Shown here in pieces: positions 3,942-47,116 of a stretch of 64,000 nt of DNA. Under the pieces are notes generated by a model. The model worked only from the letters and a program-made list of their open reading frames with translations, ran no database searches and was not told the origin of the DNA. The translations under genes and the position numbers were made by a program. Each line of letters begins with the position of its first letter. The stretch's first letter is position 1. The stretch is from the IMG/VR virus record IMGVR_UViG_3300043446_003193, positions 145,444 through 209,443 of that record; one strand, written 5' to 3'.

Positions 3942-3950
3942 TATAAATAT
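3942..3950 (-). promoter_or_regulatory. Late-promoter-like motif ATATTTATA (one of about 15 copies)
   Basis: Recurrent intergenic motif upstream of structural genes; see findings. Confidence 0.65.
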
Positions 3951-8625: not shown

Positions 8626-9216
8626 TTAGTTTAATTCAATTATGATTTCTCTCATTAAATCCTGTGATTTACACCACTTACCACATTCTTCTGCCATCTG
8701 TTTCCATTGTTTAGATTCGTTCATTGGTGCCATAAATGCTCCATGTGTAGATGGATTAGAAACAAAATCCCAACCTACTAATTCAAAATCTTCTTGAACC
8801 ATTACAGTTCCATCTCTTAATTCTTTAACAGACCCTAAACCTCTTGATGAAATACCTAAACGAATATTATTCTTTAATAATTCTTTTAATATGTTACCAG
8901 ATGGAGTTGAAAGTATTTCTACTACACCACATACATCATCACCTTCCCAAAAAATTTCTCTAATATTGTGAGATACATTTTTTAAGTTAATTACTGGAGA
9001 ATCCGGATGGTCTAATTCACCCAACGCTCTTCTTTCTTTAATGAGTTGTTCGTATTTTTTACACTCTCTTTCCAATATTTCACGTGGATATCTTCTACCA
9101 TTTTGGTTTGCAGCCCCAGCTCTTTGAAGAATGCCCTTAACTAAATAAGTACCATTTTCTTCTTGTTGAAGTTTTGCTTCAAATAAGTGTGTTTCTATTA
9201 ATAGTCCTTTGTTCAT
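8626..9216 (-). CDS. gp21: Prohead core protease, T4 gp21 family
   Basis: N.NGRRYP, ALGELDHP, NVSH, TPSGNI, LGISSRGLGS, DFVSNPS motifs. Confidence 0.95.
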   Translation of the reverse strand: MNKGLLIETHLFEAKLQQEENGTYLVKGILQRAGAANQNGRRYPREILERECKKYEQLIKERRALGELDHPDSPVINLKNVSHNIREIFWEGDDVCGVVEILSTPSGNILKELLKNNIRLGISSRGLGSVKELRDGTVMVQEDFELVGWDFVSNPSTHGAFMAPMNESKQWKQMAEECGKWCKSQDLMREIIIELN

Positions 9217-10362: not shown

Positions 10363-11238
10363 TTATTTTTTTATTGATTCCTTTAATTCTTTTAATAATT
10401 CATAACTCATCATCAATGCAGATAAATGTTGTTCTTTAATCTTTTTTACAGATTTAATTTTTTTAATATTTGCAATTGTTTCTGCTAATTTGATTTTAGT
10501 AACTTTATCTGAAATTTTTGAACCAACTTCTTTTAAATTAGTAACTATGTTTGAAACTTCATTACTAACATATTCATTTAACTTACCAGTATTATTGATA
10601 TTGTTGATATATTCTCTCAATAATCCTTTTTGTTCTTCAGTAAGGTTTTTGTATTTTGTATTAAAACTTTCTACTAATAACTTGTAAGATACTGCTCTTA
10701 AATCCTCATCTTGTTTTTTATATTCTTCTAAAACAGCATCTTTCATTTTAGAATCTTTATTTTGAATAGAAGAGTTGATAATATTTTCTGCAATTGTAAA
10801 ACGAGATGAAACTATATCAGTTGGGTCAAATTGTTCATCTGATGTAACTGTTTCAAAAATTTTATAAATAGATGCTAATGTTTTATAATTAGAAATTGGA
10901 GATTTAATAAACTCATCTAAATTATAAGTTTCTTTAATCTCTTTAATAAGATTATATTTTTCTTTTGTAAGTTTTTTCTCGTCTAATCTTTTACGAGCTT
11001 CTAAAATCGTATTGATGAATTGATCAGCTTTTGATTCTGAATTATATTTTTCATTAATAAGATATTGGTATAATTTCAATTCTTTTGATAATTCTTTTTT
11101 AGAATTAAAATATTCTTTTAGAATTTTTTCTGCTACGGACTTATTTGCAGACATTATTTCTGCGGTAATTTGTCTTACTAGTAATTCAAATATAAAACCA
11201 GTATTTTTAAATTTAGAATGTTTAATTTTTTTCATCAA
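10363..11238 (-). CDS. Conserved-looking hypothetical protein downstream of portal
   Basis: 291-aa ORF, KHSKFKNTG.IFELLVRQIT N-terminus; own ATATTTATA motif at 11257-11265. Confidence 0.55.
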   Translation of the reverse strand: MMKKIKHSKFKNTGFIFELLVRQITAEIMSANKSVAEKILKEYFNSKKELSKELKLYQYLINEKYNSESKADQFINTILEARKRLDEKKLTKEKYNLIKEIKETYNLDEFIKSPISNYKTLASIYKIFETVTSDEQFDPTDIVSSRFTIAENIINSSIQNKDSKMKDAVLEEYKKQDEDLRAVSYKLLVESFNTKYKNLTEEQKGLLREYINNINNTGKLNEYVSNEVSNIVTNLKEVGSKISDKVTKIKLAETIANIKKIKSVKKIKEQHLSALMMSYELLKELKESIKK

Positions 11239-11282
11239 TTGATATAGTTAATCAGATATAAATATATTTTTCTATTAGTTTA

Positions 11283-13031
11283 TTACTCTTTTGTTAAATC
11301 TTCTGTCAAAATCTTCTTTTTGTTACCATTCATATCTTTGAAAACTTCTAAATATGAATTTTTTGGAACATATTTTTTAACAGAACCTTCTTTCGCTTTA
11401 AGAGTTTTTATTCCTAATGGGTCTCTACCTTCTGGATGGTCATCCTTACCATATCTAACTGGGTCTTTAGGTCTACCAACCCCATCTTCCTCTAATTCTG
11501 CTTTTAATTTATTTAATTCTTCTTCAACATTTGTAGGGCCTTCGGTTCCAGTTTCTTTTGCTGGATCTACACCCTGTGTTTCAATTGATGTTAAACGGAA
11601 TGTTTGTTTAGTATCTTCTAATATTGAAAGTGTTTGCTCATCTTGTTCATCTTTAGCCATTCCCATTATAGCTTGATACATCCATTCTTTAGAGAACATT
11701 TTTGTTTGTTGCATTTGTTGAATTAATGCAACTTTAGATGTATACAACTCTACTTTCTCTTGCTCATAAATTTTAGATGGAATAGTTAATTCCAATGTAA
11801 AGTTTGTTAAACGGTCATCATCAATACCTTGTGCGTATAAGTGGATGATTGCAATTTTGGTTAATTCAGAAACCATAACTCTTTGTATTCTCTCAATGGT
11901 TTTTGCAAATCTAACATCCATCGCTGCAAGAGTTGCTTTACCATTTGTATCTTCTTCATATCCTAAATATGCTTTTGGAATTTGAAGTGCTGCCATCAAT
12001 TTATTTTTAAGATAATTGATGTCTTCAATCATATTGTATTCCAACCCTTTTAGAGTATCAATTGAAGTACCATTATCATTACCTCTTACTGGCATATAAT
12101 AATCTTCAATCAAATTCTGTATATTGTATTTTAAATTATATTCACCCGTTCTTTCATCAACAAATGGAACTTTTTTAGATGCATTTATAATTTTTTGCAT
12201 GTAGTTATCTACCTCATTTGGTGGAATATTACCTACATCAATTTTAAAGATTCGTTTTTCAGGTGCTCTCATTACTCTATGAATCAACATAGCATCTTCC
12301 ATCAACATCAATTGTTTCCAAACTCTTCTTGCACCTTCTAACATTGATTTACCATATGGAAGGAAGTTGGAATCGTTATTTAAACGGAAGTGAGCAACTT
12401 CATAATTTTCAAATTCTTTTTTAGGAGTTTGTCCATAAGAACCCAATGGGTTTTGATATGGAGCGTATACAAATTTAACTCTTTGTGGATTTTGTTGGTC
12501 AAACCCTTCAACTCTACTAACTTCATATGAAGAAAGTGGCATAACATTTACAATACCAATTCCTTCTTCTGCTGCGATTTCTAATTGTAAATATAAATCA
12601 CCATATTTTACTAAATTTCTTGTCCATGGCCATAAGTTAAATTCAACATTTAAAATATCGTAGAAAAGATTTTCTAATATTTGTTTTACATTATCATCTT
12701 CGTGATGAATTTTTAAAACATTACCCATTTCATTTCTAGCAGTACACTCATCTGCATATGTATTTAATGCTGATGATAGTATTGGGTCTGTATCCATTGA
12801 ATCGTAATCTCTGAACAAGTCAATTCTAACTTGTTGATATGCCATTGATGATTCAATGTTACCAGTTCCATAATTTGTAACCTTTAATTTCATAAAGCGG
12901 TCAACAAGATTAGTGGTCATATTTTGCCACTCATCTGTATCAATTACTTTAACTCCCTTTTCGGTTTTACGAACTATGGTGTTTGTTGAAAATAATTTTT
13001 GTAACCTGCCTAATACTGATTTATCTGCCAT
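11283..13031 (-). CDS. gp20: Portal protein, T4 gp20 family
   Basis: PYGKSMLE.ARR.WKQL.LMEDAMLIHR..RAPEKRIFKIDVGN.PP, EDYYMP.RG, IDTL.G motifs. Confidence 0.95.
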   Translation of the reverse strand: MADKSVLGRLQKLFSTNTIVRKTEKGVKVIDTDEWQNMTTNLVDRFMKLKVTNYGTGNIESSMAYQQVRIDLFRDYDSMDTDPILSSALNTYADECTARNEMGNVLKIHHEDDNVKQILENLFYDILNVEFNLWPWTRNLVKYGDLYLQLEIAAEEGIGIVNVMPLSSYEVSRVEGFDQQNPQRVKFVYAPYQNPLGSYGQTPKKEFENYEVAHFRLNNDSNFLPYGKSMLEGARRVWKQLMLMEDAMLIHRVMRAPEKRIFKIDVGNIPPNEVDNYMQKIINASKKVPFVDERTGEYNLKYNIQNLIEDYYMPVRGNDNGTSIDTLKGLEYNMIEDINYLKNKLMAALQIPKAYLGYEEDTNGKATLAAMDVRFAKTIERIQRVMVSELTKIAIIHLYAQGIDDDRLTNFTLELTIPSKIYEQEKVELYTSKVALIQQMQQTKMFSKEWMYQAIMGMAKDEQDEQTLSILEDTKQTFRLTSIETQGVDPAKETGTEGPTNVEEELNKLKAELEEDGVGRPKDPVRYGKDDHPEGRDPLGIKTLKAKEGSVKKYVPKNSYLEVFKDMNGNKKKILTEDLTKE

Positions 13032-13051: not shown

Positions 13052-13083
13052 TGAAGATACGAAAAATAATTGGAATTACCAAG
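13052..13083 (-). promoter_or_regulatory. Bacteroidota sigma70-type promoter upstream of portal
   Basis: CTTG-N20-TATCTTCA, same architecture as six other copies. Confidence 0.5.
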
Positions 13084-14143
13084 CTCTACAACTCCAATAT
13101 CTTGCTTTCCATCTTGGGCCTGGATTATCACAATTATGTCTCGCTCTAAAATTCTTTCTTCTTTCTGGATTATCTTTTTTAATAACCATTCTCTTTCCTT
13201 TTGCAGATGTACCACCAAATCCAAAGTTTACTTTAACAACATTTCCTTTGTCGTTTTTAACATATACTTTAAATTTCTTTACATCACCTTGCATTGGTTT
13301 ACCTAATTTAACACTTCTACCTTGATATTCTGCTTCATATACACAATTACAATTTGCCTCTGCAAGTTGTTTGGTATATTCTCTCATAAATTTAATAAAA
13401 TCATGAGTATCTTGTTCGTTTTCTACATCATACTCATCAATTTCTGTTGCGTCATCTCCATAGTATCCACCAGGTTGGTCGTTTTCTTTTACAGGTACAC
13501 AGTTTGGAACCATTTTACCATTTTTCATTTTACCACCAATTTCTCTATATCCATCCCAACATTCATGTAATGCATTTAGTTCTCCTAAACTTTCATCACA
13601 TTTTCTCCAACCACCACCTTTTTCTTTGTAGTTTTTTGCGGCCCATCCATTTGCATATGCTGATGGGTATACATCAAATTTAGACTTAGCAGCGGATTTA
13701 GATGCTGCCCATTTACCAGGGTCTGTTGGGCAATTCTTTTCTAAGAATAAATTTAGTTTTTCTTCTATATTCATAGTTTCATTTTTTTTCTTTCCTGCGC
13801 AATGTGCTTTTTGACTAAAACCTTTTGGATTATTACAGTCTATACTATTTTTATATTTTTGACTCCAATCTTCATTTTTTGGTTTAGTAGAAACATATAT
13901 AGGTGTTTTACCTTGTCCACTACTATCTTTACCACCTCTTCCCGCATCGTTTTGTGCAGCTCTCTTTCTACGAGTTGCACTTTCTTTCTCTTTCTTACTC
14001 ATTCCGGCAGCTTTTGCAGCGGGAACACATTTGGCATATCCACTTTTATCTCCAGAAGTTCCACATGGTGGGTGTTTACCATCAACTTTCTTGCCGATGT
14101 TTACCCATTTTTCTTTAAACCATTTATTTAAATCTTCGTTCAT
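13076..14143 (-). CDS. Modular basic protein made of short Cys/Trp/Lys-rich cassettes (putative internal-head polyprotein)
   Basis: Cassettes such as KWFKEKWV..CG..KCVP, SIDCNNPKGFSQKAHC, YPSAYANGW, CWDGY..KMVPNCVP, KVYV..NFG..FRARHNC..YWSCRAW, separated by x-N-E or hydrophobic-x-E. Confidence 0.6.
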   Translation of the reverse strand: MNEDLNKWFKEKWVNIGKKVDGKHPPCGTSGDKSGYAKCVPAAKAAGMSKKEKESATRRKRAAQNDAGRGGKDSSGQGKTPIYVSTKPKNEDWSQKYKNSIDCNNPKGFSQKAHCAGKKKNETMNIEEKLNLFLEKNCPTDPGKWAASKSAAKSKFDVYPSAYANGWAAKNYKEKGGGWRKCDESLGELNALHECWDGYREIGGKMKNGKMVPNCVPVKENDQPGGYYGDDATEIDEYDVENEQDTHDFIKFMREYTKQLAEANCNCVYEAEYQGRSVKLGKPMQGDVKKFKVYVKNDKGNVVKVNFGFGGTSAKGKRMVIKKDNPERRKNFRARHNCDNPGPRWKARYWSCRAW

Positions 14144-14174
14144 CTATAAGAGTTTCAACATATAAATATAAAAT

Positions 14175-15782
14175 TTATCCAATTAACCAGGTTAAATTTT
14201 CTGTTCCTTTTTTTCCTAAATCCATTTCATATGGATTTTGTTTTAAATGGTTAGTGGATATTAATCCTTCATATTTGTTTATTTGTGTTGCACCTAACAT
14301 ACTTTTAGTTAAGTCAATACCTTCTTGTTTTAAACGAAGTGCTGTATTTCTAACCCAAAGTCCAATTGCCATAGCCATTGTCAAGTCATCATTATAACCC
14401 TTCATAGCTTCTGCTCTTCCAGCTTGCCAAATAAATGTAAATAATTCATCTATCAATCTACCAGAACGAATAAGGATATCTTTATCGTTTATGTAGGTAT
14501 CTAATGTTGAAATAATAAGAGGACGAGTTTTTGATGTAGTAGAGAATCCTGCAACCATTTTCTTTTCATCTCTATAAAATTTACTACTCATTTGTTTTTC
14601 TACATCAATATATTTTAAATCAACACTCATATAAAATAGATTTCCGTATCCTCTATCTATACATTGTTGAATTGTAGACCATCCTACGTTTGAGTTTTCT
14701 ACTACTAGTAATGCGTTGTTCCATTCGGTTGCAACGGCTACTAAAAAGTTTCCAAAGTCTTTTGTTTCAATTTTACCTCTATATTCTGCAACTTGAGAAC
14801 TATCCTCAATATCAATAACCTGAAAAGTAGAATAATCCGAACCATCTCCTCTCGCTACGTCGGCCACTACCATATATTGTCTATTATAATTTGGATGTTC
14901 CCATTTCCAATAGTTACCATCAAACCCAGTTTTTTCTATCGGGTCCATCACATATGTATCTTTATACCACATCAATAATTGAGGATCTATTACAGTGTCA
15001 CCAGAAGATACGAAGTCACAGTCACATTCTTGTGCTGCACCTTTAACTCCTAAGATTCTTGTTTGTTCATCTCTCCACGCTTGATTTCTTTCAGGGTGTA
15101 CAGTCCAATGTAGATTAATACAATTAAACCCGTTTGAACCATTTTCTCCTTCAACCCACATTTTATGGAACCAGTTACCCACACCATTAGGAGTAGATAA
15201 TACAATAGCAGCACCACCCGTTGAAAGTGTTGACTGTGCTGATAACCAAATTTCATCAATATCTCTAATGAATGCGGCCTCATCCACAACTAATAGGGAT
15301 AGGGCTTCCGAACGTCCTGCATCAGGAGAACTTGCAATTGCTTTTACTTGAGAACCATTTTTTAATTTAAGAGAAAGTTTGTTATCTTCAGCTGCTGCGG
15401 TTGAACCATCTCTTAACCAAACAGGAAGAAGGTCATGCATTACTCTAACCTTTTCAACAAGGTTTTTGGCTACCGTAACTTTTGTTGCAATAACCAATGC
15501 ATTAAAATCTTGATTAAATAACATTTTCCAAAGAATGTATCCTGCAGAAAGTGTTGAAAGACCTAACTGACGGGATTTAAGAATAATGTTAAAACGATTA
15601 TCTTTAAAATCTGTTAAACATCCCTCCTGGAAAGGATAAAGGTGAAAGGGTATTTTTCCTCTCACCGGGTGCTGAATTACACAATATTTTTTCATAAAGT
15701 AAATGGGGTCTCCCGCACACTTACGATATTCTTCAGCGATTATCTCTTTCAGGCTCTTCTTTGGTTGAGCTTGAGCTTGCAT
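14175..15782 (-). CDS. gp17: Terminase large subunit, T4 gp17 family
   Basis: LYPFQ, KSRQLGLST (Walker A), LLVVDEAAF (Walker B), STPNG, DVARG.G.DYS, DDL.MA nuclease motifs. Confidence 0.96.
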   Translation of the reverse strand: MQAQAQPKKSLKEIIAEEYRKCAGDPIYFMKKYCVIQHPVRGKIPFHLYPFQEGCLTDFKDNRFNIILKSRQLGLSTLSAGYILWKMLFNQDFNALVIATKVTVAKNLVEKVRVMHDLLPVWLRDGSTAAAEDNKLSLKLKNGSQVKAIASSPDAGRSEALSLLVVDEAAFIRDIDEIWLSAQSTLSTGGAAIVLSTPNGVGNWFHKMWVEGENGSNGFNCINLHWTVHPERNQAWRDEQTRILGVKGAAQECDCDFVSSGDTVIDPQLLMWYKDTYVMDPIEKTGFDGNYWKWEHPNYNRQYMVVADVARGDGSDYSTFQVIDIEDSSQVAEYRGKIETKDFGNFLVAVATEWNNALLVVENSNVGWSTIQQCIDRGYGNLFYMSVDLKYIDVEKQMSSKFYRDEKKMVAGFSTTSKTRPLIISTLDTYINDKDILIRSGRLIDELFTFIWQAGRAEAMKGYNDDLTMAMAIGLWVRNTALRLKQEGIDLTKSMLGATQINKYEGLISTNHLKQNPYEMDLGKKGTENLTWLIG

Positions 15783-17102: not shown

Positions 17103-17138
17103 TGTAACTGTTTAATTTATATATAAATATATATTGTC

Positions 17139-20100
17139 TTATTCATAAAAAATACCAAGTATCTGATTTAATGGTGCGAATGTACCTGTAAGTTTATATG
17201 TTTTTCCATTATAAAAGAATACCAGTCCTTCATTTGCCACTATTCTTTCAATTCCACCCAATCTATTCAATCTACTCAATTCTTGTTTTAATTTTTGAAT
17301 TTGTGCAGGATTGCCAGAAGTTTTAACTTGATCGGCAACTGTTTTTAATCGTGATTTCATTGAACGAATTGCCTTATCAGGATGAACCGTCAATACACTA
17401 CCAACAAATTCTAAAACATCTGCACCTACTCCTAAAAATATTTCTTCAAATGGTTTGATATTATCTTTTTGTTGTTTTGCAACATTTACTTTATCATTAT
17501 TCATTGCCCAGTCTTGTAACTTAGGATTTGATATTGTATTTAATCTAAAAGATTTATCACCAAATGCCCATCTTCTAATTAAAGCTTCTTTTGTAAGTTT
17601 ATCAACTTTAACAGGTGCGTTTGATGTAATCCACCAATCCCACCAACTTTGATGATAATCTGCTACATTATCTGAATCTTTTAATCCAAATTCGGATTGT
17701 AATTTTGAAATCTTAGAAAGATATTTTGATTGTTTAGAACTTAAATCTTCTGATTTTGGAATTTCAGTTATTGGTGGTCCTTGAATTGTGTATTTAGATT
17801 GAACATCTGCATTTACTTGCTTAATCATACCTGCTAATACACTCTCTGCTCCATCCACCTTACCAACAGCGTTTCCTTTTTCATCATATTCTATACAATT
17901 GTGAAATACTAAAAGTGCTTGTCCGTAAGGAATAACATTTACCGAAGTTGGCCAAATTACTTCAATATTCATAAATTTGGTTCCTTCACCAAATACTTTT
18001 TCTCTTTGTTTTTGAGATAATGCAGATACTGCTGCTGAAAGGTCTTTCATTGCGTAATTATATGCATCTGTTAAACCACCTCTTCCGCCAAATTTTGATG
18101 CAACATCTTCAATGCCCATTGCACTTGCTCCACCATTTGATAAATGTCCTTTATTTCTAGCTGCAATTAATCTACCATTTTTCCAGCTGATTGCTAACGC
18201 CTGTCCATCGGTTTTTTCTCTTACTACACCTAAATCCCCATTAAGTGCTTTTGTAACGATATCTTTAAGGTGTCCAAATGTCAAATCCATATCATCAAAT
18301 GGATGACTCATATGACCATATGCCCCACCTTCCATTAATAGACCTTCTTTTAAAAATTCAGTTGGTTTTTCATCAAATCTAGGTAGGTTTCTTGCAGAAT
18401 ATTTTACAGTATATTGGGTTTCATCTTCATCACCCCATATTGCATCTGCTATTGGAAAATCCATCTGCGTATATCCACCACTATAATACCAATCATCTCC
18501 TTTATTTACACCATCGTCTGCGTCTAATTTTCTAGTATGTCCTTTTGGTAAATAAGCACCATCGGCTTGAGAATCTGCATCAGCTAATCCACTTATTTCA
18601 TTTATATACATTTCAATATCTTCGTATAATTTTGAAATTTGTTCGTCAAAGTTAGGTTTGATGTTTAATTCTTTTTCCATTTTAGTTATCTCATCATATC
18701 CCATATTTCTCAATGATCTTGCAACATCATTTGCTTTATATCCGTTTGGATTTCCGAATAAGTATGCATTTATTCTTTTTCTGAATGTTGAATTTTTATA
18801 TGCATCAATTAAATTTTTAAAATGAACATCATTGGAACCCATTTCATCTATTTTACGAAATGTAGTTGCCTGTCTTCCATTTATTGTTGGCATTCCATGA
18901 TCATCCTTTCCAATATCTTTAACTTGTACCTTTTTATTTTTAAACTTACCCATTAAAATAGTATCACCCGTATCAACATCTACATTAACATCTTCTTTGT
19001 TAATTTCAATTGCTGCCAGTTGCTTTTTAGCAGATGCTAACGAATCATGAGTTCCTAATCTATCTCCACCATTTTTTGGATATACAACATATTTGTCACC
19101 AACTTTTTTTATGGTTTCGTTTACATTTTCATTGTAGATTTGTTTGTTGATTCTACCATATTCTCTCATTAGAATTCCTGCAACTGCATGTGCTTGGTTT
19201 TCTATTGGAGAACCATCTGCACCATCTTTTTCTAAATTTCTAACTAACCCCAATTCATCTTGCTTTCTATGAACCATTTCATGTGCAAGAGTTCTTAGGA
19301 TATCTGCTGTTAATCTACCTTCGGTTGCAACATATATGGATTTATCTTCAGGATTATATCCACCTAAACTTGTTTTTACTTCTGCGAATTCTCTTCCACC
19401 AACTAATGTAACATTTGGTGTTTCTTTTAATTTTAATCTTTTAGTTGCAAATTCTACAAAATGTTGAATAGATTGTTGTTTTGTTTCTGATAAATTTTCA
19501 TTTAAAGAAAACTTACTAATCATTTTTTTATTATTCCAACTATCTGCTATTTTTTCCGCAATTTCAGGAGTAATATCCATATTTTCTATTCTTTCTGCAA
19601 TTGCGGCTGCAAATATATTTAGTGCACTTGCTTCATCAATATCTTCGGCAAAAATAGCAGCTTTTCCTACACCAGTTGCAACTACTTCTGTTACAGCATG
19701 TGGTATCAATTCCATAGCCGTATGTTTTACCAACCCAGCAGCACCATGTGCCAATCCGCCACCAACTGCTGCAAATAATGCTGTTGTAGCTATTTTAATA
19801 CCAACGGATTTTAAAGCTTTTTTCTGCTTATCATCTAATTTACCACCAGCCATTAAAGTTTTTACACTACTACCAGCTGTTTTAAATGTATCATATTCAT
19901 GCTTCAAACCATGCATAATTGCATGTCCAGCACCTTTTGCTTTGTCCATTATAGCCTGACCCCAACTTCTTCTCTCATCGTGTCCTTCTTTTTTATTTAA
20001 TAACTTAGAAAAAGTTTGTTTTTCTTCTTTACTCCAATTTTTTACTTTTTCTTGTATTCTTTTTACTTGACCTTCTTTTGTATTTCCTGATTTTTCTTTT

Positions 20101-21224
20101 TGTGCATTTTTTTCAGCATCAGATTTTAATTCTACACCAGATAATTTTTGTTCTGGAGGCGGACCTTGTTGGGTATCAGAATCGGTTCCTATTGGAGAAG
20201 TTTTTTCTTTATCTATTTTTCCTTGAGTGGTTTGTCCTTGTTTTGTTGGTTGTCCAGGCTCAGATGGTTTAGCTGCTTGAGTTGCTGCTTTTCCAGGTTC
20301 TTCTTTTTTCTTTGGTTGATTAGCAGGAGCATCGGCTGGCCCAGCTATTTTAGCAGCTTGAATATGTGCAGGATGCTCTTTAGGTAATCGTAATGCATCT
20401 CTTGCTTTAATTTTCTTTTGTTGTCCTTTTGAATTTGTATATGTTATATCAACGTCTAATGCAGGATTTTCAGCTTCTCCAAAATATTGATTTGTAAATT
20501 CTTCAAACATTTCATTGGTAATGTAGTTTTGAATTATTTCAGAAATAGGATCATATACATAATCATCGTCTGTTGTAGCTACTGCTCTAATTTCTTTATT
20601 CTTTTTTTCAATAGCCTCTACATCTTCTTTTGAAGGGTATCCTCTATATAATTCTTCGTTAAGTTTGGTTGTTATCATTTTGAATATTTCTCTATCAAAT
20701 TTTGGATATGCTTTTAAGAAAAACTTTTTAGCTTTTTCTTTATCATTACTTCCCAATCCTTTTCTAACTTGAGTTCCACTAATTGGATTTGGTTCTGGAG
20801 GGATAGGATATGTATAACCAATTTCATCATAACCATATCCAGATTTTCCGTTATATGGTTTGAAATATTTACCTTGTAACCTTGTTGCATCTTTTTCACC
20901 AACTGCTGCAATATAAGCAGTAGTTTTTCCATCAAACTTTCCAAGTATTTCTACCGGTCTATATGGGTTAGAAACTTTAACAAATTTTGAAGCAGGAACT
21001 CCAAACATTGTAGTTGCTATTTCTTTTTTTTCTTTAAAAGTAAATGGTGATTTATCTGAAGATGTATCATTAGAACTTGCTATATAGACATTTGCTTCTC
21101 CAAACTGAGAAACTAATCTTTGATACGCATCATAATGTCCTCTGTGAAATGGTTGAAAACGACCACCGTATATTACGATAGTTTTTTTAACCTCTGGTTT
21201 ATTCACTTCTTTTATTAAATTCAT
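17139..21224 (-). CDS. 1361-aa multidomain protein: HxGH nucleotidyltransferase + HExxH metallopeptidase-like + ATP-dependent ligase-like domain
   Basis: GGRFQPFHRGH and ISGTQVR; RTLAHEMVH..Q; EKTDG, NIEVI, LVFH, EGLVF, YKLTG ligase-superfamily motifs. Confidence 0.75.
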   Translation of the reverse strand: MNLIKEVNKPEVKKTIVIYGGRFQPFHRGHYDAYQRLVSQFGEANVYIASSNDTSSDKSPFTFKEKKEIATTMFGVPASKFVKVSNPYRPVEILGKFDGKTTAYIAAVGEKDATRLQGKYFKPYNGKSGYGYDEIGYTYPIPPEPNPISGTQVRKGLGSNDKEKAKKFFLKAYPKFDREIFKMITTKLNEELYRGYPSKEDVEAIEKKNKEIRAVATTDDDYVYDPISEIIQNYITNEMFEEFTNQYFGEAENPALDVDITYTNSKGQQKKIKARDALRLPKEHPAHIQAAKIAGPADAPANQPKKKEEPGKAATQAAKPSEPGQPTKQGQTTQGKIDKEKTSPIGTDSDTQQGPPPEQKLSGVELKSDAEKNAQKEKSGNTKEGQVKRIQEKVKNWSKEEKQTFSKLLNKKEGHDERRSWGQAIMDKAKGAGHAIMHGLKHEYDTFKTAGSSVKTLMAGGKLDDKQKKALKSVGIKIATTALFAAVGGGLAHGAAGLVKHTAMELIPHAVTEVVATGVGKAAIFAEDIDEASALNIFAAAIAERIENMDITPEIAEKIADSWNNKKMISKFSLNENLSETKQQSIQHFVEFATKRLKLKETPNVTLVGGREFAEVKTSLGGYNPEDKSIYVATEGRLTADILRTLAHEMVHRKQDELGLVRNLEKDGADGSPIENQAHAVAGILMREYGRINKQIYNENVNETIKKVGDKYVVYPKNGGDRLGTHDSLASAKKQLAAIEINKEDVNVDVDTGDTILMGKFKNKKVQVKDIGKDDHGMPTINGRQATTFRKIDEMGSNDVHFKNLIDAYKNSTFRKRINAYLFGNPNGYKANDVARSLRNMGYDEITKMEKELNIKPNFDEQISKLYEDIEMYINEISGLADADSQADGAYLPKGHTRKLDADDGVNKGDDWYYSGGYTQMDFPIADAIWGDEDETQYTVKYSARNLPRFDEKPTEFLKEGLLMEGGAYGHMSHPFDDMDLTFGHLKDIVTKALNGDLGVVREKTDGQALAISWKNGRLIAARNKGHLSNGGASAMGIEDVASKFGGRGGLTDAYNYAMKDLSAAVSALSQKQREKVFGEGTKFMNIEVIWPTSVNVIPYGQALLVFHNCIEYDEKGNAVGKVDGAESVLAGMIKQVNADVQSKYTIQGPPITEIPKSEDLSSKQSKYLSKISKLQSEFGLKDSDNVADYHQSWWDWWITSNAPVKVDKLTKEALIRRWAFGDKSFRLNTISNPKLQDWAMNNDKVNVAKQQKDNIKPFEEIFLGVGADVLEFVGSVLTVHPDKAIRSMKSRLKTVADQVKTSGNPAQIQKLKQELSRLNRLGGIERIVANEGLVFFYNGKTYKLTGTFAPLNQILGIFYE

Positions 21225-21277
21225 GTCTATAAATATCTTAAATGTTGTACTTTTAGCTTTTTAGTAACTTTTTTAAT

Positions 21278-21309
21278 CAAACATAGTGAAAATTTTTGAA
21301 ATTTCCAAT
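21278..21309 (-). promoter_or_regulatory. Bacteroidota sigma70-type promoter (ATTG-N20-TATGTTTG)
   Basis: Perfect TAnnTTTG -7 element; a late motif also lies at 21228-21236. Confidence 0.6.
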
Positions 21310-22697
21310 TAAAGTTTTACATTTATCATCCAAGCATTTTCTGCAAATTGTTCTTTTGATACTAATTCGTATTGAACTTGATTTATACCATCTTCCTTAT
21401 AATTTATTTTTCCTTCCTGCATTTCCTTAACAAATCTTCTTTCGTTTTTTGCAGTTGGTTCACCCTTTATCCATTCTCCATTTACAAATCCCTCACTAGG
21501 ATGTGGTAATGCGTAAAATCTTCCATTTCTTCTATATGGTGTATTATTACTACTTACTTTAAATGTTTCATTTGTTATCTCTACATTATGTATCAATAAA
21601 TCAGAAATTACATTATTTTTATCTTTTAAAAAATCAGATATATTTTCAGGTAAAACTACATCATTGTAAATTTTAATATCTGCAATCTTTCCTTTTAAAT
21701 AATTTGCTATAATTGGATTACATTCACTGCATGGATTTTTACCAATTAAAATATCATTATTATATTTTTTTAATTTACCTTCAAATTCATGCGGTTTATA
21801 TTCCAATGTTTCTGTTCTTGTATTTTTAATTAAATTACTATTACAATAAAAATATATTTTATTTTCTTTAGAGTCTACCGAAACTGTTATCCATGTCCAT
21901 TCTCCAAATCCTCTTTTTATCCATGCATAAATTTGATTATCGTTTTGAGAATATAAAGAAGCGGATATTGCTCTAGAATTATTAAATCCTATAAAATAAG
22001 ATTCTTTTTTATCTATACTTAAAATTGGATATTCTACATATCGTTTATCTTTTATACCTATTAACCATTCTTTATATTTTTCAGGCTGATCTTCAATTTT
22101 ACACAAAATAGATAATGTATGTGATTGGGATAATAATTCCGATATACCAGTATCTTTTGGAATCGTTATATAAGAATTCTCTCCATCAAAATTAAAACAA
22201 GGAATATCATTGTATTCAAAAAATAAATTATCTTCTGTTAATCCTTCAAAACGACATCTCCAAAATAGGTCATCATCTTCCATACCCCAATCCCAATATT
22301 CATTAGAGTAACCATTTGTTGCTTCTACCTGTTCTTTATTCATTAATACAACACCACCGAAGTATTGTTCATAGTTTAATCTATATTTGTATTTAGATAC
22401 GGCGGTTGCAATATGTGTTGGAAACTTGTCTGGATATGAATAATCACAACTATCGTTTTCCGGTAACATATCTACATCGTGAAAAGCAACATAATCACAT
22501 CCATCTTCAAATGCATGTTTGGCTGCAATATTTTTCATCGCACCTCTATTGAATAATTTATCATCCGTTTGGTGTACAATATAAAATTGATGTGGAATTC
22601 CTTTTTTGTTTAAAAATTTTGTAAGATGAGGAACTAACATTTTAAGATGATATTCCCTATCTCTATAAGGAACACATATTCCGAGTTTTTTTATCAT
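21309..22697 (-). CDS. GT7 (beta-1,4-galactosyltransferase-like) glycosyltransferase with inserted LamG/ConA domain
   Basis: VPYRDR, FNRG..KN, HDVD, YFGGV, NGYSN.YW.WG.EDDD; insert FDGENSYI...W..ITV...IGK...LKGKIADIKIYN. Confidence 0.85.
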   Translation of the reverse strand: MIKKLGICVPYRDREYHLKMLVPHLTKFLNKKGIPHQFYIVHQTDDKLFNRGAMKNIAAKHAFEDGCDYVAFHDVDMLPENDSCDYSYPDKFPTHIATAVSKYKYRLNYEQYFGGVVLMNKEQVEATNGYSNEYWDWGMEDDDLFWRCRFEGLTEDNLFFEYNDIPCFNFDGENSYITIPKDTGISELLSQSHTLSILCKIEDQPEKYKEWLIGIKDKRYVEYPILSIDKKESYFIGFNNSRAISASLYSQNDNQIYAWIKRGFGEWTWITVSVDSKENKIYFYCNSNLIKNTRTETLEYKPHEFEGKLKKYNNDILIGKNPCSECNPIIANYLKGKIADIKIYNDVVLPENISDFLKDKNNVISDLLIHNVEITNETFKVSSNNTPYRRNGRFYALPHPSEGFVNGEWIKGEPTAKNERRFVKEMQEGKINYKEDGINQVQYELVSKEQFAENAWMINVKL

Positions 22698-26100: not shown

Positions 26101-27963
26101 AGTACCACTATTCAAATCTGCATAAGTTCCTCCAGACCCTACTTTGTATTGAAAGTTATCATAAGTAAATGCAGTTGCTAATGATTTTGTTATACTAATA
26201 GAACCATTTGAATATTCTCTTCCAGTTACCCAACTTGCACCCAATCCAATTTGACTTTGATTTATTTTAAAACGAACACTAAAATTATCAGTTAATACAA
26301 ATCCATTTCCATCTGTAATTGTGGCCGTATGTGTTGATGTTCCATCATTTGCAGATGTCGCAGGATTATTAACAGTTATAGTAATTACTCCAGATGCCGT
26401 TTTTGCTCCTGATGCGGAAACCGTGCTATCGGTTGACGTAGCAGAAACACTTGTAACAGAAAATCCATTATCATTTGAACCATTAATAGTAACCGTTCCT
26501 GTAAAAGTTCTATTAGCTCCTGTTAAAACATAATCTTGATCATCAATTGTTAAAACTCCCTTTTGTGGTATTAATATATCTCCGGTTTCTGTATATCCGG
26601 ATACAAATGTAGAATTGCCATCGCTTCTTCTTGCTCTTACTCTTGCTTTTGCATATTGTGCAGTTGTAGTTTTACCTGCAATAGTTACCGAAGGTGTTAC
26701 ATTTGTACCGGCTGCAACCAAAGAAGTCCATGCTCCATAAGAACCACCACTATCTTTAACAGCATAATCTATATCATAATTTAAAGTAGTTCCACTTACA
26801 GCTGCAGTCAAAGCAGTGACCGTTACACCAAATGATTGTCCAAAAGCAGAATATGCTGCACTAATAGATGGTGAAACCATAGCAACAGTTACATTCGTAG
26901 TTGTATGATTTCTAACACTACTATTACTACTATTTGTAATATTTACTCTAAGAGATTGACTACCTAAAGTATTATAATAAATTGATAAATTTTGAGAAGT
27001 TGATGTAGAAATACTTGCTCCTGTTAATACCCAATTATAAGATATTGCAATAGAATCGGGATTATATAAAACTGTTGAAGTAACAGAATATGCAACAAAA
27101 GGTTCTACACTCGTAGAAGCACCAATTGATACCGCCATTGGTCTTCTAAATGTAGTTGCCGTAGTACTTGCCGTATCAAATGGGTTTGCCGAATCTTTGA
27201 CCACAATAGTATAATCATCATCGGCCGTATTACTTGAATTATTAAAAGTTGCAGTATTTACATCTGCAGAACCATAACCTGCTCCATTAAAATTATAATA
27301 ATACGGAGAAACACCACCTGCAACATTCACAGTAAAATCTACGGAACCGGTAGTATAATTATACGTTCCTGCGCCAGTAAATGATGGAGAAGTTGTAACT
27401 GATGTAATTGTTAAATCAACTGCATTTACAAAAACTGTTTTAGAATCATTTGCTTGTTTATTTGAAGAGTTTATTCTAAGTTCTAATCGTAATGTGTTTG
27501 TAGAATTTGGTACAATATATGTATTACTATTATCAACATAAAAGTCAGAAGCATTAGTTACATTTCCGGTAAGAGTTGCAGGAAATACATTTGTTCCAGT
27601 ATATACACCATTTACCCAGATTTTAATATATGCCGTTTCTCCGGACTGCATACCCGTCACAGTATATGTAAAATCTAATCTTTTACCTGATTGAGCATTT
27701 GTATTAGCAGGACTAGTTAAAGTATTTATTGTAATTGCAGGAACTTTACCTTCAAATTCTACAAACTCATATTGACTTCCAGTAGGCCTTGCTCCAGTAC
27801 TTGGGTTTAATACTCCGACAGTATTTGGTAAATCTCTGACAGTATTTGGGTCAACTGTACCGGTCAAAAATTGATTTGCAACATATGAACCACTTACTGT
27901 CGTAGTTGCAGTGTTAAGACCGGCAGAAGAACCTAAATCTCCAATTCGTATATTACTTGCCAT
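23167..27963 (-). CDS. Long Ser/Thr-rich fibre/adhesin (Ig/FN3-like beta repeats) with C-terminal Hint (BIL/hedgehog-like) domain
   Basis: Beta-rich T/S/G composition; GGGT/CLAKGTKI...TFEHP...SLDVE...YFANNILVHN at 23200-23646. Confidence 0.8.
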   Translation of the reverse strand: MASNIRIGDLGSSAGLNTATTTVSGSYVANQFLTGTVDPNTVRDLPNTVGVLNPSTGARPTGSQYEFVEFEGKVPAITINTLTSPANTNAQSGKRLDFTYTVTGMQSGETAYIKIWVNGVYTGTNVFPATLTGNVTNASDFYVDNSNTYIVPNSTNTLRLELRINSSNKQANDSKTVFVNAVDLTITSVTTSPSFTGAGTYNYTTGSVDFTVNVAGGVSPYYYNFNGAGYGSADVNTATFNNSSNTADDDYTIVVKDSANPFDTASTTATTFRRPMAVSIGASTSVEPFVAYSVTSTVLYNPDSIAISYNWVLTGASISTSTSQNLSIYYNTLGSQSLRVNITNSSNSSVRNHTTTNVTVAMVSPSISAAYSAFGQSFGVTVTALTAAVSGTTLNYDIDYAVKDSGGSYGAWTSLVAAGTNVTPSVTIAGKTTTAQYAKARVRARRSDGNSTFVSGYTETGDILIPQKGVLTIDDQDYVLTGANRTFTGTVTINGSNDNGFSVTSVSATSTDSTVSASGAKTASGVITITVNNPATSANDGTSTHTATITDGNGFVLTDNFSVRFKINQSQIGLGASWVTGREYSNGSISITKSLATAFTYDNFQYKVGSGGTYADLNSGTYTTAHNGWTAPSADQTWYYHVKASGGTYRQSDFNETSVTVYGYPNQGYGYSLTSNINSGTLSQVQSVVFSVTRSSGNFTKISARLDAYYPNGGSAGGQSLTDAQIDPDSVASFSFSALSLYDAICNSSTIGDGYGSVYLTYTISSGLYYYHTLTNKTVTVTREPGTIDVVKGGSGFVDGYAIRGVNFTLDASYTTNGPTETNSQGGYWYVWLDNNRMQASPLSFNGANPYNGTYLIRTNTSTTFCRKLATTSKTTLSSSSRGTVTYTWWGNLYTYSGTTNAWTLYINAGSERSKDISITVKGKRLASITGTPSVAFTKGYTEMSIYAGLLTYDSNDGTIDLTADNITVEYQIADTNGTVLTTQSGITFTGLSFGSTYKMRVKATDDWGTIKYSSWTANQLVEDLDYTFTLNTPATLYGIYAYQGPTYTPTRIINLDTWSGRTGGTFSTNSSVITFDNLEPNTKALASIHTVLSMDNKYTWSNFPGAYTTMTVSVDSGNAPGTGAYGMFRMFQNTYNGLWETADNTSPQQGEGALNIKTFQLYNTGDTSGNSLPYTNGNYYLAARVVSSATLGVTTTYRIHGQKSSTDTSQGTDYYIVLRNRGVVNTLSFVSKSVVCGGVTATYSVGQIDTATKLVIEKSTDNSTWTAAETFTSITANTNYAAFISLTSGTTMYFRAKIYNSSDTLLSTTATNSAISYNAVAASGNITAPTVSLDTPTCGTLTYAFSRTGTANAQNAATYYVVWYKCTFDYGPEGSILNQGSRSFGTSYAFSISSIACDNPIYYEIYAVSESGCSGTANSSCLIYKYTGAGCDCTGGGTCLAKGTKILMWDGSEKNVEDLIEGDLLKNISIDGFSEEEDAWKTFSTNTFDYVDSMSAVKSVTSGVWHYHYVINDKLKITFEHPIFIKRDNEYKFLRAEDVIVGDMMYNLDGNWEMIEEKIRVDELDEFISLDVETNDTYFANNILVHNVLGPGGKITP

Positions 27964-34158: not shown

Positions 34159-34344
34159 ATGAAATACGCAATGTTGCAAATTAAAAAAGAAACCCATGAA
34201 CTTCTCAAATCATATTGTGAAGAACACGGGTTTAAAATGGGTAGTTTAGTTGAAAATCTAATCAAAAAACACGTTGGTGTTTCAAAACCTCAATCAGGTG
34301 TGTTGAAGGCTGATAAAGTTACTGTTAGAAATCAATCTTACTAA
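34159..34344 (+). CDS. Ribbon-helix-helix-like DNA-binding protein
   Basis: AMLQI strand + ETHELLKSYCEEHG helix + MGSLVENLIKKH helix; only credible plus-strand gene. Confidence 0.7.
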   Translation: MKYAMLQIKKETHELLKSYCEEHGFKMGSLVENLIKKHVGVSKPQSGVLKADKVTVRNQSY

Positions 34345-47089: not shown

Positions 47090-47116
47090 CTATTCTTTTT
47101 TATAAATATTTTTATT

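What the first reader, a model, noticed from the sequence alone, without database searches (positions are those of the whole stretch)
17139..21224. 1361-aa enzyme polyprotein apparently punctuated by prohead-protease sites
Seen: an HxGH nucleotidyltransferase (HRGH 21135-21146), a linker, a hydrophobic Gly/Ala helical segment, an HExxH domain (19269-19283), several mini-modules and a ligase-superfamily domain (KTDG 18204-18215, EGLV 17220-17231). Module borders carry clusters of hydrophobic-x-E: LIKE, KLNE, ITNE, YFGE, SLNE-NLSE, IYNE-NVNE, KIDE, YINE, FLKE-LLME. Established: T4 gp21 cleaves after (I/L)-x-E in core and internal proteins, and T4 internal proteins are injected with the DNA. Inference: the phage packages one precursor, cuts it during head maturation and injects an adenylyltransferase/protease/ligase kit, possibly for counter-defence (NAD or RNA repair). 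The gene has both a late motif and a host-type promoter.
Basis: partly seen in the sequence, partly recalled or inferred. Interest (0 to 1): 0.8.

Follow-up and report, generated by a model that had tools for sequence, protein, structure and literature searches.

The report
Phage RNA-repair enzyme precursor, probably capsid-loaded
This 1361-residue gene of a large T4-type phage strings together an NMNAT-like nucleotidyltransferase, a small zinc protease and an unannotated RNA-ligase-like enzyme, and its domain junctions and N-terminus carry the marks of T4 head-protease substrates, so it may be an RNA-repair kit delivered with the DNA, though this is unproven.

Summary
The ORF (17139-21224, minus strand, 1361 aa) and all motif coordinates are real. 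The N-terminus is an HxGH nucleotidyltransferase closest to archaeal/NadM NMNATs. Residues 581-699 are an intact SprT/IrrE-like zincin. Residues 966-1361 are a Pfam-less covalent nucleotidyltransferase whose KTDG lysine superposes on the catalytic lysine of eight RNA/DNA ligases and one capping enzyme.

The C-domain anchors a large modular family (1847 clusters at 50% identity). Relatives fuse it to, or place it beside, a Pnk-like kinase, an HD phosphohydrolase and a CCA-adding enzyme, so the system is RNA (tRNA) end healing and sealing.

The phage has a T4-type head module with an S77 (gp21-like) protease. Hydrophobic-x-Glu is not enriched beyond controls in the single sequence. Across 120 homologues it is the only tripeptide pattern conserved in the variable linkers (9 sites against 0-3 for controls), and the sites fall in low-confidence stretches of the models. 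Family N-termini carry T4 CTS-like leaders. This protein starts MNLIKE, like T4 Alt's MELITE. Cyanophage cytidyltransferases carry IP-type CTSs, and one was reported in a virion proteome.

Packaging and cleavage are plausible (about 0.5) but untested. The host-type promoter is not supported.

The parts
17139..21224 (-). Whole ORF, 1361 aa plus stop
   Evidence: More than 2800 homologues, many of them full length.
21228..21236 (-). ATATTTATA motif 12 nt upstream of the ATG. It recurs before 11 genes and is a putative phage (late?) promoter element.
   Evidence: 18 copies on the coding strand against 1 on the other, and 11 of the 18 lie 12-35 nt upstream of a start.
21207..21224 (-). N-terminal leader MNLIKE (aa 1-6). 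Hydrophobic-x-E is kept here in 97% of homologues. It resembles T4 Alt's MELITE.
20655..21185 (-). HxGH nucleotidyltransferase, NMNAT-like (aa 14-190). Motifs: HRGH at 27-30, ISGTQVR at 148-154. It ends in KLNE.
   Evidence: Pfam PF01467. PHROG 395. A profile of the domain against PDB finds archaeal NMNAT and NadM at E 5e-11 to 1e-8. Invariant residues are listed.
20325..20474 (-). Conserved module of unknown function (aa 251-300, LDVDITY...HPAH), preceded by YFGE
20025..20324 (-). Low-complexity K/A/Q/P/E-rich linker (aa 301-400) with many indels among homologues
19545..19823 (-). Variable Gly/Ala-rich hydrophobic segment (aa 468-560). Possibly membrane-active; not a clear transmembrane helix.
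   Evidence: Kyte-Doolittle maximum 1.57
19485..19505 (-). Tandem junction motif LNE-N-LSE (aa 574-580) before the zincin. Kept in 99% and 94% of homologues.
   Evidence: Low pLDDT in the model.
19128..19484 (-). SprT/IrrE-like zincin metallopeptidase (aa 581-699). HEMVH at 648-652. Invariant Glu675 is the likely third metal ligand. It ends in IYNE.
   Evidence: Foldseek PDB: PprI/IrrE at probability 0.99, plus selecase. AFDB: SprT-like and IrrE-like at E 1e-6 to 1e-3. Invariant residues.
18993..19115 (-). Rare beta-beta-alpha mini-module (aa 704-744), present in about 5% of close homologues
   Evidence: PHROG 3684.
18843..18992 (-). Mobile beta-rich module m2 (aa 745-794). It is found at different positions in relatives and ends in KIDE.
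18642..18842 (-). Four-helix module m3 (aa 795-861), ending in NFDE
18330..18641 (-). Variable module (aa 862-965), ending in the tandem junction FLKE-G-LLME
   Evidence: Low pLDDT.
17142..18329 (-). RNA-ligase-like covalent nucleotidyltransferase (aa 966-1361). N-terminal GGAYGHMSHPFDD; KTDG at 1004-1007; a helical insert of about 160 aa; EGLVF at 1332-1336; YKLTG at 1343-1347.
8626..9216 (-). Prohead protease, Peptidase_S77 (T4 gp21-like). It is the proposed processing enzyme. Its own N-terminus MNKGLLIE matches T4 gp21's MNEPQLLIE.

Best explanation
The gene encodes a modular precursor from a large family of 'Far-T4' phage proteins whose business is RNA (tRNA) end repair and nucleotide chemistry.

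Its parts, in order:
- an NMNAT-like HxGH nucleotidyltransferase
- a small SprT/IrrE-type zinc peptidase
- several small mobile modules
- a divergent ATP-type RNA ligase with a helical insert

Shown here:
- The domain identities.
- The RNA-repair context. Relatives fuse these domains to, or place them next to, a Pnk-like kinase, an HD phosphohydrolase and a CCA-adding enzyme.
- The conserved hydrophobic-x-Glu islands at every junction.
- The T4-like head protease in the same genome.

Inferred:
- The protein is made late.
- It enters the prohead through its short Alt-like or CTS-like N-terminal leader.
- The S77 prohead protease cuts it after the junction Glu residues into separate enzymes.
- The pieces leave with the DNA, so that RNA repair, and perhaps NAD or adenylyl chemistry, is in place before host anticodon nucleases or NAD-depleting defences act.
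For: Domains: NTase; zincin; ligase fold, with Lys1004 in register with Rnl2 K35, Rnl1 K99, Pab1020 K95, Cgt1 K67, and by range arithmetic Trl1, NgrRnl and the ASFV ligase.

RNA-repair context: Pfam on 73 relatives. P0285 combines NTase, DUF5661, AAA_33 kinase, HD, PolyA_pol and the ligase. A split operon of NTase | CCA | kinase | HD | ligase lies upstream of TerL and portal. A CCA/HD neighbour appears.

Protease and sites:
- S77 protease, Gp23 and Portal_T4.
- The capsid protein's QLLDE|A aligns with T4 gp23's FLTE|A.
- Nine linker positions keep hydrophobic-x-E in at least 90% of 120 homologues, against 0-3 for controls.
- The same motif sits before module m2 in 9 of 13 unrelated upstream contexts (P 0.005).
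- Junction sites lie in stretches with pLDDT under 50.
- Fission points of the split operon coincide with these sites.

Leaders:
- 107 of 139 family representatives have hydrophobic-x-E ending at residues 4-16, against 15 of 46 window ORFs.
- The pattern M..h..hh.E (h = hydrophobic) fits 18 representatives, T4 gp24, Alt, IPII and IPIII, window ORF 7921-8349 and the stand-alone ligase P0199.
- In T4 the CTS residues 4 and 7 target and 8 and 10 direct processing (PMC9026906).

Other:
- Cyanophage cytidyltransferases start with IP-like CTSs, and one was reported in a virion proteome (PMC10665884).
- The gene sits between a tail-fibre gene and the terminase and portal genes, and is preceded by the motif shared with structural genes.
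Against: - There is no proteomic or biochemical datum for this protein or any close relative.
- This protein's own leader is only 6 residues long and fails the 10-mer CTS pattern.
- Some family members start directly at the NTase or at GGAYGH with no leader.
- The Glu before GGAYGH is Met, Cys or Ala in about 15% of lineages.
- In the single sequence the motif is no more enriched than its reverse.
- Hydrophobic-x-E also occurs inside the folded domains.
- The split operon looks like an ordinary translationally coupled enzyme operon.
- In S-SRM01 the zincin and cytidyltransferase genes lie in the replication module.
- Counts over related sequences are not independent.
Confidence: 0.5

Rival explanations
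1. The enzymes are the same, but the protein is an ordinary cytoplasmic multidomain RNA-repair and nucleotide enzyme. It is made during infection, never packaged and never cut. The conserved hydrophobic-x-Glu residues are domain-end or linker features, and the N-terminal peptides have no targeting role.
For: - T4's own repair enzymes (Pnkp, Rnl1) are not virion proteins (established knowledge).
- The split version in L003 is a compact operon with 4-nt gene overlaps.
- The reversed motif is equally enriched in the single sequence.
- Leaderless family members exist.
- Glu is replaced by Met, Cys or Ala before GGAYGH in some lineages.
- The S-CREM2 authors themselves warn that abundant enzymes may co-purify with virions.
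Against: - In the linkers hydrophobic-x-E is conserved, while the reversed, Asp and Lys controls are not.
- Leaders match the T4 CTS pattern at the positions shown to matter.
- The gene keeps a position inside the morphogenesis block across diverged phages.
- Low-complexity and hydrophobic inserts and a peptidase domain are odd for a soluble repair enzyme.
Confidence: 0.3
2. This is a polyvalent protein in the sense of Iyer et al. 2017. It is delivered with the DNA, but its own zincin domain cuts it, in the head or after entry, rather than the prohead protease.
For: - An intact HExxH with an invariant downstream Glu, and a SprT/IrrE-like fold.
- The polyvalent-protein model assigns exactly this role to zincin domains (PMC5512222).
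- One relative has a Pfam SprT-like hit.
Against: - Most relatives (NTase plus ligase, 52 of 150 representatives, and others) have no zincin yet keep the junction and leader motifs.
- The zincin also exists as a 132-aa stand-alone gene in cyanophages.
- The Pfam polyvalent-protein MPTase family was not detected.
Confidence: 0.12
3. The main role is NAD+ supply. The N-domain is a true NMNAT that rebuilds NAD+ against NAD-depleting defences, and the C-domain either uses NAD+ or is unrelated to RNA.
For: The best PDB matches of the N-domain profile are all NMNAT or NadM. Phage NMNATs and NAD-centred conflicts are described in PMC9503650 and PMC10665884.
Against: - NCBIfam NMNAT equivalog cutoffs are missed by far (30.8 against 127 bits).
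- The match covers only the first 55 residues or so.
- No Nampt or Nudix partner was seen.
- Relatives add kinase, HD, CCA-adding and 2H domains, which point to RNA ends.
Confidence: 0.08

Closest known systems
T4 Alt and internal proteins IPI-III (CTS-targeted, gp21-processed, ejected head proteins)
   Same: - Same head machinery: S77 protease, gp23-type capsid protein and gp20-type portal.
- A short N-terminal leader ending in hydrophobic-x-Glu (MNLIKE against Alt's MELITE).
- The family consensus MNxLSxFLVE fits the CTS pattern at residues 4, 7, 8 and 10.
- Enzyme cargo, as with Alt.
   Different: - Twice the size of Alt.
- About ten internal candidate sites would release several enzymes rather than only trimming the ends.
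- The cargo is RNA-repair and NMNAT-type rather than an ADP-ribosyltransferase.
- Packaging is not shown.
- No sequence homology to Alt or the IPs beyond the leader.
Polyvalent proteins of phages and conjugative elements (Iyer et al. 2017, PMC5512222)
   Same: Many unrelated domains in one polypeptide, a zincin peptidase domain, shuffled module order, a location next to virion genes, and proposed delivery with the DNA and proteolytic release.
   Different: - That survey reported no ATP-grasp-type RNA ligases linked to polyvalent proteins.
- The zincin here is not the Pfam MPTase-PolyVal family.
- The junction motif fits the head protease, not necessarily the zincin.
T4 Pnkp/Rnl1 and RM378 kinase-HD/RNA-ligase tRNA repair
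   Same: Same logic of healing and sealing: kinase, 3'-end phosphoesterase and ligase, present in relatives fused or adjacent. RM378 belongs to the same capsid-protein clade (39% identity).
   Different: - This protein itself lacks the kinase and phosphatase.
- The ligase is a distinct, unannotated family with a helical domain of about 160 aa inserted before motifs IV and V, and an invariant N-terminal GGAYGHMxHPFDD.
- It is almost always coupled to an HxGH nucleotidyltransferase, which T4 repair does not use.
- The statement about RM378's enzymes rests on my own knowledge of Blondal et al., not on a tool result.
T4-like cyanophage 'cytidyltransferase' (T4-GC 190; S-CRM01 g127, S-CREM2 ORF154)
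   Same: An HxGH nucleotidyltransferase of T4-type phages with a CTS-like N-terminus. It was reported in a virion proteome. In S-SRM01 it sits next to a stand-alone copy of the same zincin domain.
   Different: It is only marginally similar in sequence (pairwise E 0.037), has no ligase domain, and the gene lies in the replication region.

Membership tests
HxGH (cytidylyltransferase-like, PF01467) nucleotidyltransferases | Pfam model above its gathering score | tested here: met
   29.7 bits against a cutoff of 21, aa 18-73. TIGR00125: 30.7 against 27.7.
HxGH (cytidylyltransferase-like, PF01467) nucleotidyltransferases | HxGH motif and the second signature ISxTxxR | tested here: met
   HRGH at 27-30 and ISGTQVR at 148-154. 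H27, G29, H30, T151 and R154 are invariant in 30 diverse relatives.
NMN adenylyltransferase (archaeal/NadM type) | Equivalog-level match over the whole domain | tested here: not met
   The best PDB hits of the profile are all NMNAT or NadM (E 5e-11), but only over about 55 residues. NCBIfam equivalogs: 28.6 against 181 bits and 30.8 against 127 bits.
Covalent nucleotidyltransferases (ATP-dependent RNA/DNA ligases, capping enzymes) | Motif I KxDG with the nucleophilic lysine in the conserved structural position | tested here: met
   KTDG is invariant. Model residue K50 is in register with the catalytic Lys of Rnl2, Rnl1, Rnl3 and Cgt1, and of Trl1, NgrRnl and the ASFV ligase. The residue numbers of those lysines come from my knowledge of the literature.
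Covalent nucleotidyltransferases (ATP-dependent RNA/DNA ligases, capping enzymes) | Nucleotidyltransferase fold match clearly above background | tested here: inconclusive
Covalent nucleotidyltransferases (ATP-dependent RNA/DNA ligases, capping enzymes) | Motifs IV (EGxxxK-like) and V (K-x-K-like) | tested here: inconclusive
   EGLVF and KTYKLTG are invariant and form a beta-hairpin. They were not covered by the structural alignments, and motif V has a single conserved Lys.
Known RNA ligase families (Pfam/PDB sequence level: Rnl1, Rnl2, Rnl3, Trl1) | Sequence-profile match | tested here: not met
   No Pfam, NCBIfam or PHROG hit for aa 955-1361. The profile against PDB returns only chance hits. 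AFDB clusters: two unnamed relatives only.
Zincin metallopeptidases (SprT / ImmA-IrrE / minigluzincin type) | HExxH plus a downstream third ligand, on the zincin fold | tested here: met
   H648, E649, H652 and E675 are invariant in 32 sequences. Matches: PprI/IrrE at probability 0.99, selecase, and SprT-like or IrrE-like AFDB clusters at E 1e-6 to 1e-3. No Pfam model passes.
Polyvalent proteins (Iyer et al. 2017) | Several unrelated effector domains plus a peptidase in one polypeptide, next to virion genes | tested here: met
Polyvalent proteins (Iyer et al. 2017) | Transfer into the host with the DNA | not testable with these tools
   Needs virion proteomics or ejection assays.
T4-type prohead-protease substrates / CTS-targeted internal proteins | A gp21-family (S77) protease in the genome with T4-like specificity | tested here: met
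   PF03420 at E 1e-29. The capsid protein's LLDE|A aligns with gp23's LTE|A, and the protease N-terminus has LLIE like gp21.
T4-type prohead-protease substrates / CTS-targeted internal proteins | A 10-residue N-terminal CTS (hydrophobic at 4, 7 and 8; Glu at 10) | tested here: inconclusive
   This protein has only MNLIKE (Alt-like) and fails the 10-mer pattern. 18 of 139 family representatives, the stand-alone ligase and window ORF 7921-8349 pass it.
T4-type prohead-protease substrates / CTS-targeted internal proteins | Accessible, conserved (L/I/hydrophobic)-x-E sites | tested here: met
T4-type prohead-protease substrates / CTS-targeted internal proteins | Presence of processed fragments in virions | not testable with these tools
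   The only datum is for a distant cyanophage cytidylyltransferase (PMC10665884).

The most novel reading that the evidence does not exclude
Large T4-type phages of aquatic bacteria load a complete RNA-repair and adenylyl-transfer kit into the capsid as one polyprotein. The head-maturation protease acts as a polyprotein convertase at hydrophobic-x-Glu junctions. The released enzymes are injected ahead of gene expression.

Those enzymes would include:
- a new RNA ligase family with an inserted helical domain and a GGAYGHMxHPFDD N-terminus exposed by cleavage
- an NMNAT-like partner that may pre-adenylylate RNA 5'-phosphates or regenerate NAD

The family numbers in the thousands, so this would be a widespread counter-defence mode.
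Probability: 0.3. Interest if true: 0.8.

Novelty: new variant of a known kind. Interest (0 to 1): 0.66.

Why it matters
If the precursor is packaged and cut as predicted, three things follow.
- T4's capsid-targeting and gp21-processing system would extend from small internal proteins and Alt to a true multi-enzyme polyprotein.
- tRNA and RNA repair could be delivered as protein rather than expressed after entry.
- The unexplained cytidyltransferases seen in cyanophage virions would have a rationale.

Independently of packaging, two findings stand.
- The C-terminal domain is a very large family (1847 clusters at 50% identity) of RNA-ligase-like enzymes with no Pfam or PHROG model and an unusual topology.
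- Its near-obligate pairing with an NMNAT-like nucleotidyltransferase suggests an undescribed step in RNA end repair or NAD-linked ligation.

Both are directly testable with recombinant protein.

Tried and rejected
- Direct family scans (Pfam, NCBIfam, PHROGs) named only the N-domain.
- The C-domain profile against PDB sequences gave only chance hits, RNase III and eS6.
- Foldseek on the C-domain was weak (E at least 0.1), so I relied on VIA-align registers and on context.
- The wide VIA search was dominated by meaningless helical-bundle hits to residues 329-407 of the model.
- Single-sequence motif statistics were rejected as evidence. [LI]xE is not significant overall, and its linker enrichment is mirrored by the reversed motif.
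- The conserved LLxE before GGAYGH might have been a pure domain feature. Glu is replaced by Met, Cys or Ala in some lineages, and those lineages carry another hydrophobic-x-E 11-22 residues upstream. That is compatible with a border mark but could be chance in a 30-aa window.
- TATAAATA as a T4 late promoter was rejected: wrong strand and a chance-level count.
- The sigma-70 scan was below the shuffles.
- I tried to test whether the junction residue covaries with the protease family by fetching contigs of the Met and Cys variants. The contigs were too short or had no DNA.
- The Atlas feature search on modules m2 and m3 gave only leads below the trust level, including an 'IpIV internal head protein' cluster at score 0.63.
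- No paper on Mel-JY01 was found. Burroughs & Aravind 2016 is not held.
- Megablast of 20 kb against the phage collection found nothing.

Full report
**1. The observation**

The minus-strand ORF 17139-21224 is intact and encodes 1361 aa.

The window is about 30% G+C and nearly all its genes are on the minus strand. It is a phage with a T4-type head module:
- Gp23 capsid protein, 4015-5640
- Peptidase_S77 prohead protease, 8626-9216
- Portal_T4, 11283-13031
- large terminase, 14175-15782

Upstream of the gene lie a GT7 glycosyltransferase with a lectin domain (21309-22697) and a 2031-aa protein with a C-terminal Peptidase_S74 chaperone, which marks a tail fibre or spike. The gene therefore sits inside the morphogenesis block.

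By capsid protein, the nearest isolates are Microcystis phage Mel-JY01 (55%), Flavobacterium phages 'immuto' (53%) and Rhodothermus phage RM378 (39%).

**2. The domains**

*N-terminal domain (aa 14-190).*
- It passes Pfam CTP_transf_like and PHROG 395.
- HxGH and ISGTQVR are invariant across 30 diverse relatives.
- A profile of the domain finds only archaeal NMNAT and NadM structures in PDB (E 5e-11 to 1e-8).
- That match covers only about 55 residues, and NCBIfam equivalog cutoffs are missed.
- I call it NMNAT-like; the substrate is unverified.

*Zincin (aa 581-699).*
- An AlphaFold model of aa 570-862 (pLDDT 79) matches Deinococcus PprI/IrrE (probability 0.99), Mycobacterium ImmA-type regulators and selecase.
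- It also matches AFDB clusters named SprT-like or IrrE-like (E 1e-6 to 1e-3).
- His648, Glu649, His652 and Glu675 are invariant. The domain looks like an intact minimal zincin.

*C-terminal domain (aa 966-1361).*
- No Pfam, NCBIfam, PHROG or PDB sequence match.
- Its model (pLDDT 78) gives weak Foldseek hits, but these are led by T4 Rnl1, archaeal Rnl3 and T4 Rnl2.
- In every one of these alignments the KTDG lysine falls on the known nucleophilic lysine. The residue numbers of those lysines are from my knowledge of the literature.
- EGLVF and YKLTG form the terminal hairpin expected of motifs IV and V. They follow a helical insert of about 160 aa, which is an unusual topology.
- The invariant N-terminal GGAYGHMxHPFDD is predicted to be disordered.

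**3. The family**

- A full-length search found more than 2800 relatives.
- An exhaustive search with the C-domain found 1847 clusters at 50% identity. The proteins are 390-1930 aa long, and the domain is almost always C-terminal.
- Module order is shuffled among relatives. NTase plus ligase is the commonest core.
- Pfam on the N-terminal parts of 73 diverse relatives found CTP_transf_like in 50, plus AAA_33/Zeta/KTI12 P-loop kinases, PolyA_pol (CCA-adding) with its RNA-binding domain, HD, 2H phosphoesterase, SprT-like and DUF5661.
- P0285 fuses NTase, DUF5661, kinase, HD, CCA-adding enzyme and ligase in one 1930-aa protein.
- In a related 189-kb contig the same functions are five adjacent, overlapping genes: NTase+DUF5661 | CCA | kinase | HD | ligase. 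They sit in the same place, upstream of the terminase and Portal_T4 genes.
- Another relative has a CCA/HD enzyme next door.
- This fusion-and-fission pattern identifies the system as RNA (tRNA) end healing and sealing. It follows the logic of T4 Pnkp and Rnl1 against anticodon nucleases (background: PMC7824862).

**4. The hydrophobic-x-Glu junctions**

*In the single sequence the statistic is weak.*
- [LI]xE occurs 16 times against 12.4 expected.
- The tenfold density difference between linkers and cores is matched by the reversed motif, because linkers are richer in Glu.

*At family level the signal is clear.*
- In the poorly conserved parts, nine positions keep hydrophobic-x-E in at least 90% of 120 homologues: 6, 190, 229, 250, 576, 580, 794, 960 and 965.
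- The reversed motif is kept at three positions, all of them the same Glu residues. The Asp and Lys versions are kept at none.
- Inside the domain cores all of these motif types are equally common.
- The alignment shows the motif exactly where insertions and module swaps occur: L(N/K/R)E-x-(L/I)SE before the zincin, I(Y/F)xE at its end, FRx(I/V)xE after m2, N(F/L)xE after m3, and LLxE before GGAYGH.
- Module m2 is preceded by hydrophobic-x-E in 9 of 13 unrelated upstream contexts (P 0.005).
- The sites lie in the low-confidence stretches of both models. The interior occurrences lie in confident helices and strands.
- The gene boundaries of the split operon coincide with the junction motifs of the fused protein.

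**5. Fit to the head protease**

- The capsid protein's QLLDE|A aligns with the T4 gp23 maturation site FLTE|A.
- The protease begins MNKGLLIE, like gp21's MNEPQLLIE. The review PMC9026906 notes that LIE-9 conforms to the gp21 cleavage logo.
- The same review states three things:
  - The first 10 residues of IPIII are the capsid targeting sequence (CTS).
  - Residues 4 and 7 matter for targeting, and 8 and 10 for processing.
  - Alt loses a short N-terminal propeptide and is also trimmed at its C-terminus.

The tool-derived T4 leaders are:
- gp24 MAKINELLRE
- Alt MELITELFDE
- IPII and IPIII MKTYQEFIAE

Comparison with the family:
- 107 of 139 diverse members have hydrophobic-x-E ending at residues 4-16. 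The control is 15 of 46 window ORFs (Fisher P 9e-8, though related sequences are not independent).
- The consensus is MN(E/D)LS(N/K)FLVE|SILxE.
- The pattern M..h..hh.E (h = hydrophobic) matches the following:
  - 18 representatives
  - the stand-alone ligase P0199 (MIRLKKLLNE)
  - only ORF 7921-8349 in this window (MIKLKDLLKE, between protease and scaffold)
  - among the first-Met ORFs called in the two T4 segments held: only gp24, IPII and IPIII; Alt's annotated N-terminus, tested separately, also fits
- It also hits UvsX of S-SRM01, which is a false positive.
- Whichever module comes first in a relative, a leader ending in hydrophobic-x-E precedes it.
- This protein and its close kin have a shorter conserved leader, MNL(I/L)xE|(V/A)(N/D)KP, like Alt's MELITE.

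**6. Outside support and counter-evidence**

Support:
- T4-like cyanophage cytidyltransferases begin with IP-type CTSs: S-SRM01 MKNFHQFITE|A, S-CRM01 g127 MKLFNQFFKE|A and S-BM3 MKTLKFFLE|S.
- The S-CREM2 study found its cytidylyltransferase in the virion proteome and remarks that such enzymes are detected frequently. It also warns of co-purification (PMC10665884).

Counter-evidence:
- These enzymes are only marginally similar to the N-domain here.
- In S-SRM01 a stand-alone copy of the zincin (30% identity, E 3e-17) lies just upstream of the cytidyltransferase, in the replication region. This links the two domains functionally and argues against the zincin being merely a processing device.
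- Some family members have no leader.
- The Glu before GGAYGH is Met, Cys or Ala in about 15% of lineages, although another hydrophobic-x-E lies 11-22 residues upstream in those lineages.

**7. Promoters**

- T4's TATAAATA is on the wrong strand here and occurs at a chance count.
- The coding strand carries ATATTTAT(A) 18 times against once on the other strand. Eleven of the 18 lie 12-35 nt upstream of start codons, including this gene and several structural genes. This is a likely phage promoter element.
- No sigma-70-type site stands out.

**8. Verdict**

The domain identities and the RNA-repair theme are well supported. Conserved junction and leader motifs, a matching protease and the gene's position make capsid loading and head-protease processing the best single explanation (about 0.5).

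It remains an inference. A cytoplasmic multidomain enzyme (0.3) and zincin self-processing (0.12) are live rivals.

Relative to what is known (T4 CTS cargo, polyvalent proteins, phage RNA repair) this is a new variant. It combines all three and rests on an unannotated, very large ligase-like family.

Noticed in passing
window, coding (-) strand; e.g. 21228-21236, 17122-17130, 14161-14169, 11257-11265, 3942-3950, 42029-42037, 47101-47109: ATATTTAT(A) occurs 18 times on the gene strand against once on the other. Eleven of the 18 lie 12-35 nt upstream of start codons, mostly of structural genes. This is a likely phage promoter element. It is the reverse complement of T4's late TATAAATA.
   Followed up: partly
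window 7921-8349 (-): A 142-aa ORF between the prohead protease and the scaffold gene starts MIKLKDLLKE. That fits the T4 CTS pattern and is nearly the same as the leader of stand-alone ligase homologues (MIRLKKLLNE). It is a candidate internal head protein. No Pfam or PHROG hit.
   Followed up: partly
window 10363-11238 (-): A 291-aa ORF just after the portal gene has 20 [LI]xE against 6.3 expected. It is a likely prohead core protein degraded by the protease. The scaffold candidate 5664-6881 starts MANSKLLKE.
   Followed up: no
window 58636-59013 (-) and 59015-59884 (-): There is a second, small (125 aa) HxGH-type ORF (GRWQTWHAGH) with weak similarity to aa 12-161 of the finding (E 0.02). 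It lies next to a UvdE UV-endonuclease gene (Pfam E 6e-73).
   Followed up: partly
L002 5572-6894 (S-SRM01), L008 1426-2283 and 645-881 (S-CRM01), L009 1501-2532 (S-BM3): T4-like cyanophage 'cytidyltransferases' begin with near-copies of the T4 IPII/IPIII capsid targeting sequence (MKNFHQFITE|A, MKLFNQFFKE|A). So does the small S-CRM01 g129 (MKKLDQFLTE). This would explain why such enzymes are reported in cyanophage virion proteomes.
   Followed up: partly
L003 4837-11245: A related 189-kb contig has the system split into five overlapping genes: NTase+DUF5661 (with its own HELAH zincin motif), CCA-adding enzyme, Pnk-like kinase, HD, ligase. They lie between an SbcCD gene and the terminase and portal genes.
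   Followed up: yes
window 18291-18329 (-), aa 966-978: GGAYGHMxHPFDD is invariant across the family but predicted to be disordered. It may be a metal- or nucleotide-binding N-terminal arm of the ligase domain. Some stand-alone homologues begin exactly at M-GGAYGH.
   Followed up: no
window 18993-19115 (-), aa 704-744: This beta-beta-alpha mini-module (KYVVYPKNGGDRLGTHDSLASAKKQLAAIE) is present in only about 5% of close homologues. It is inserted exactly after the IYNE junction and matches PHROG 3684.
   Followed up: partly
window 34325-37471 (-), 27953-34048 (-), 21309-22697 (-): Three neighbouring genes: a fused SbcD-SbcC nuclease (1048 aa); a 2031-aa tail fibre or spike with a C-terminal Peptidase_S74 intramolecular chaperone; and a GT7-type glycosyltransferase fused to a ConA-like lectin domain directly upstream of the finding.
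   Followed up: no
window 9510-10106 (-) and 13076-14143 (-): ORFs near the portal gene carry DUF3008 and a weak DUF5872 match. The same small-module families surfaced as weak Atlas leads for modules m2 and m3 of the finding.
   Followed up: no
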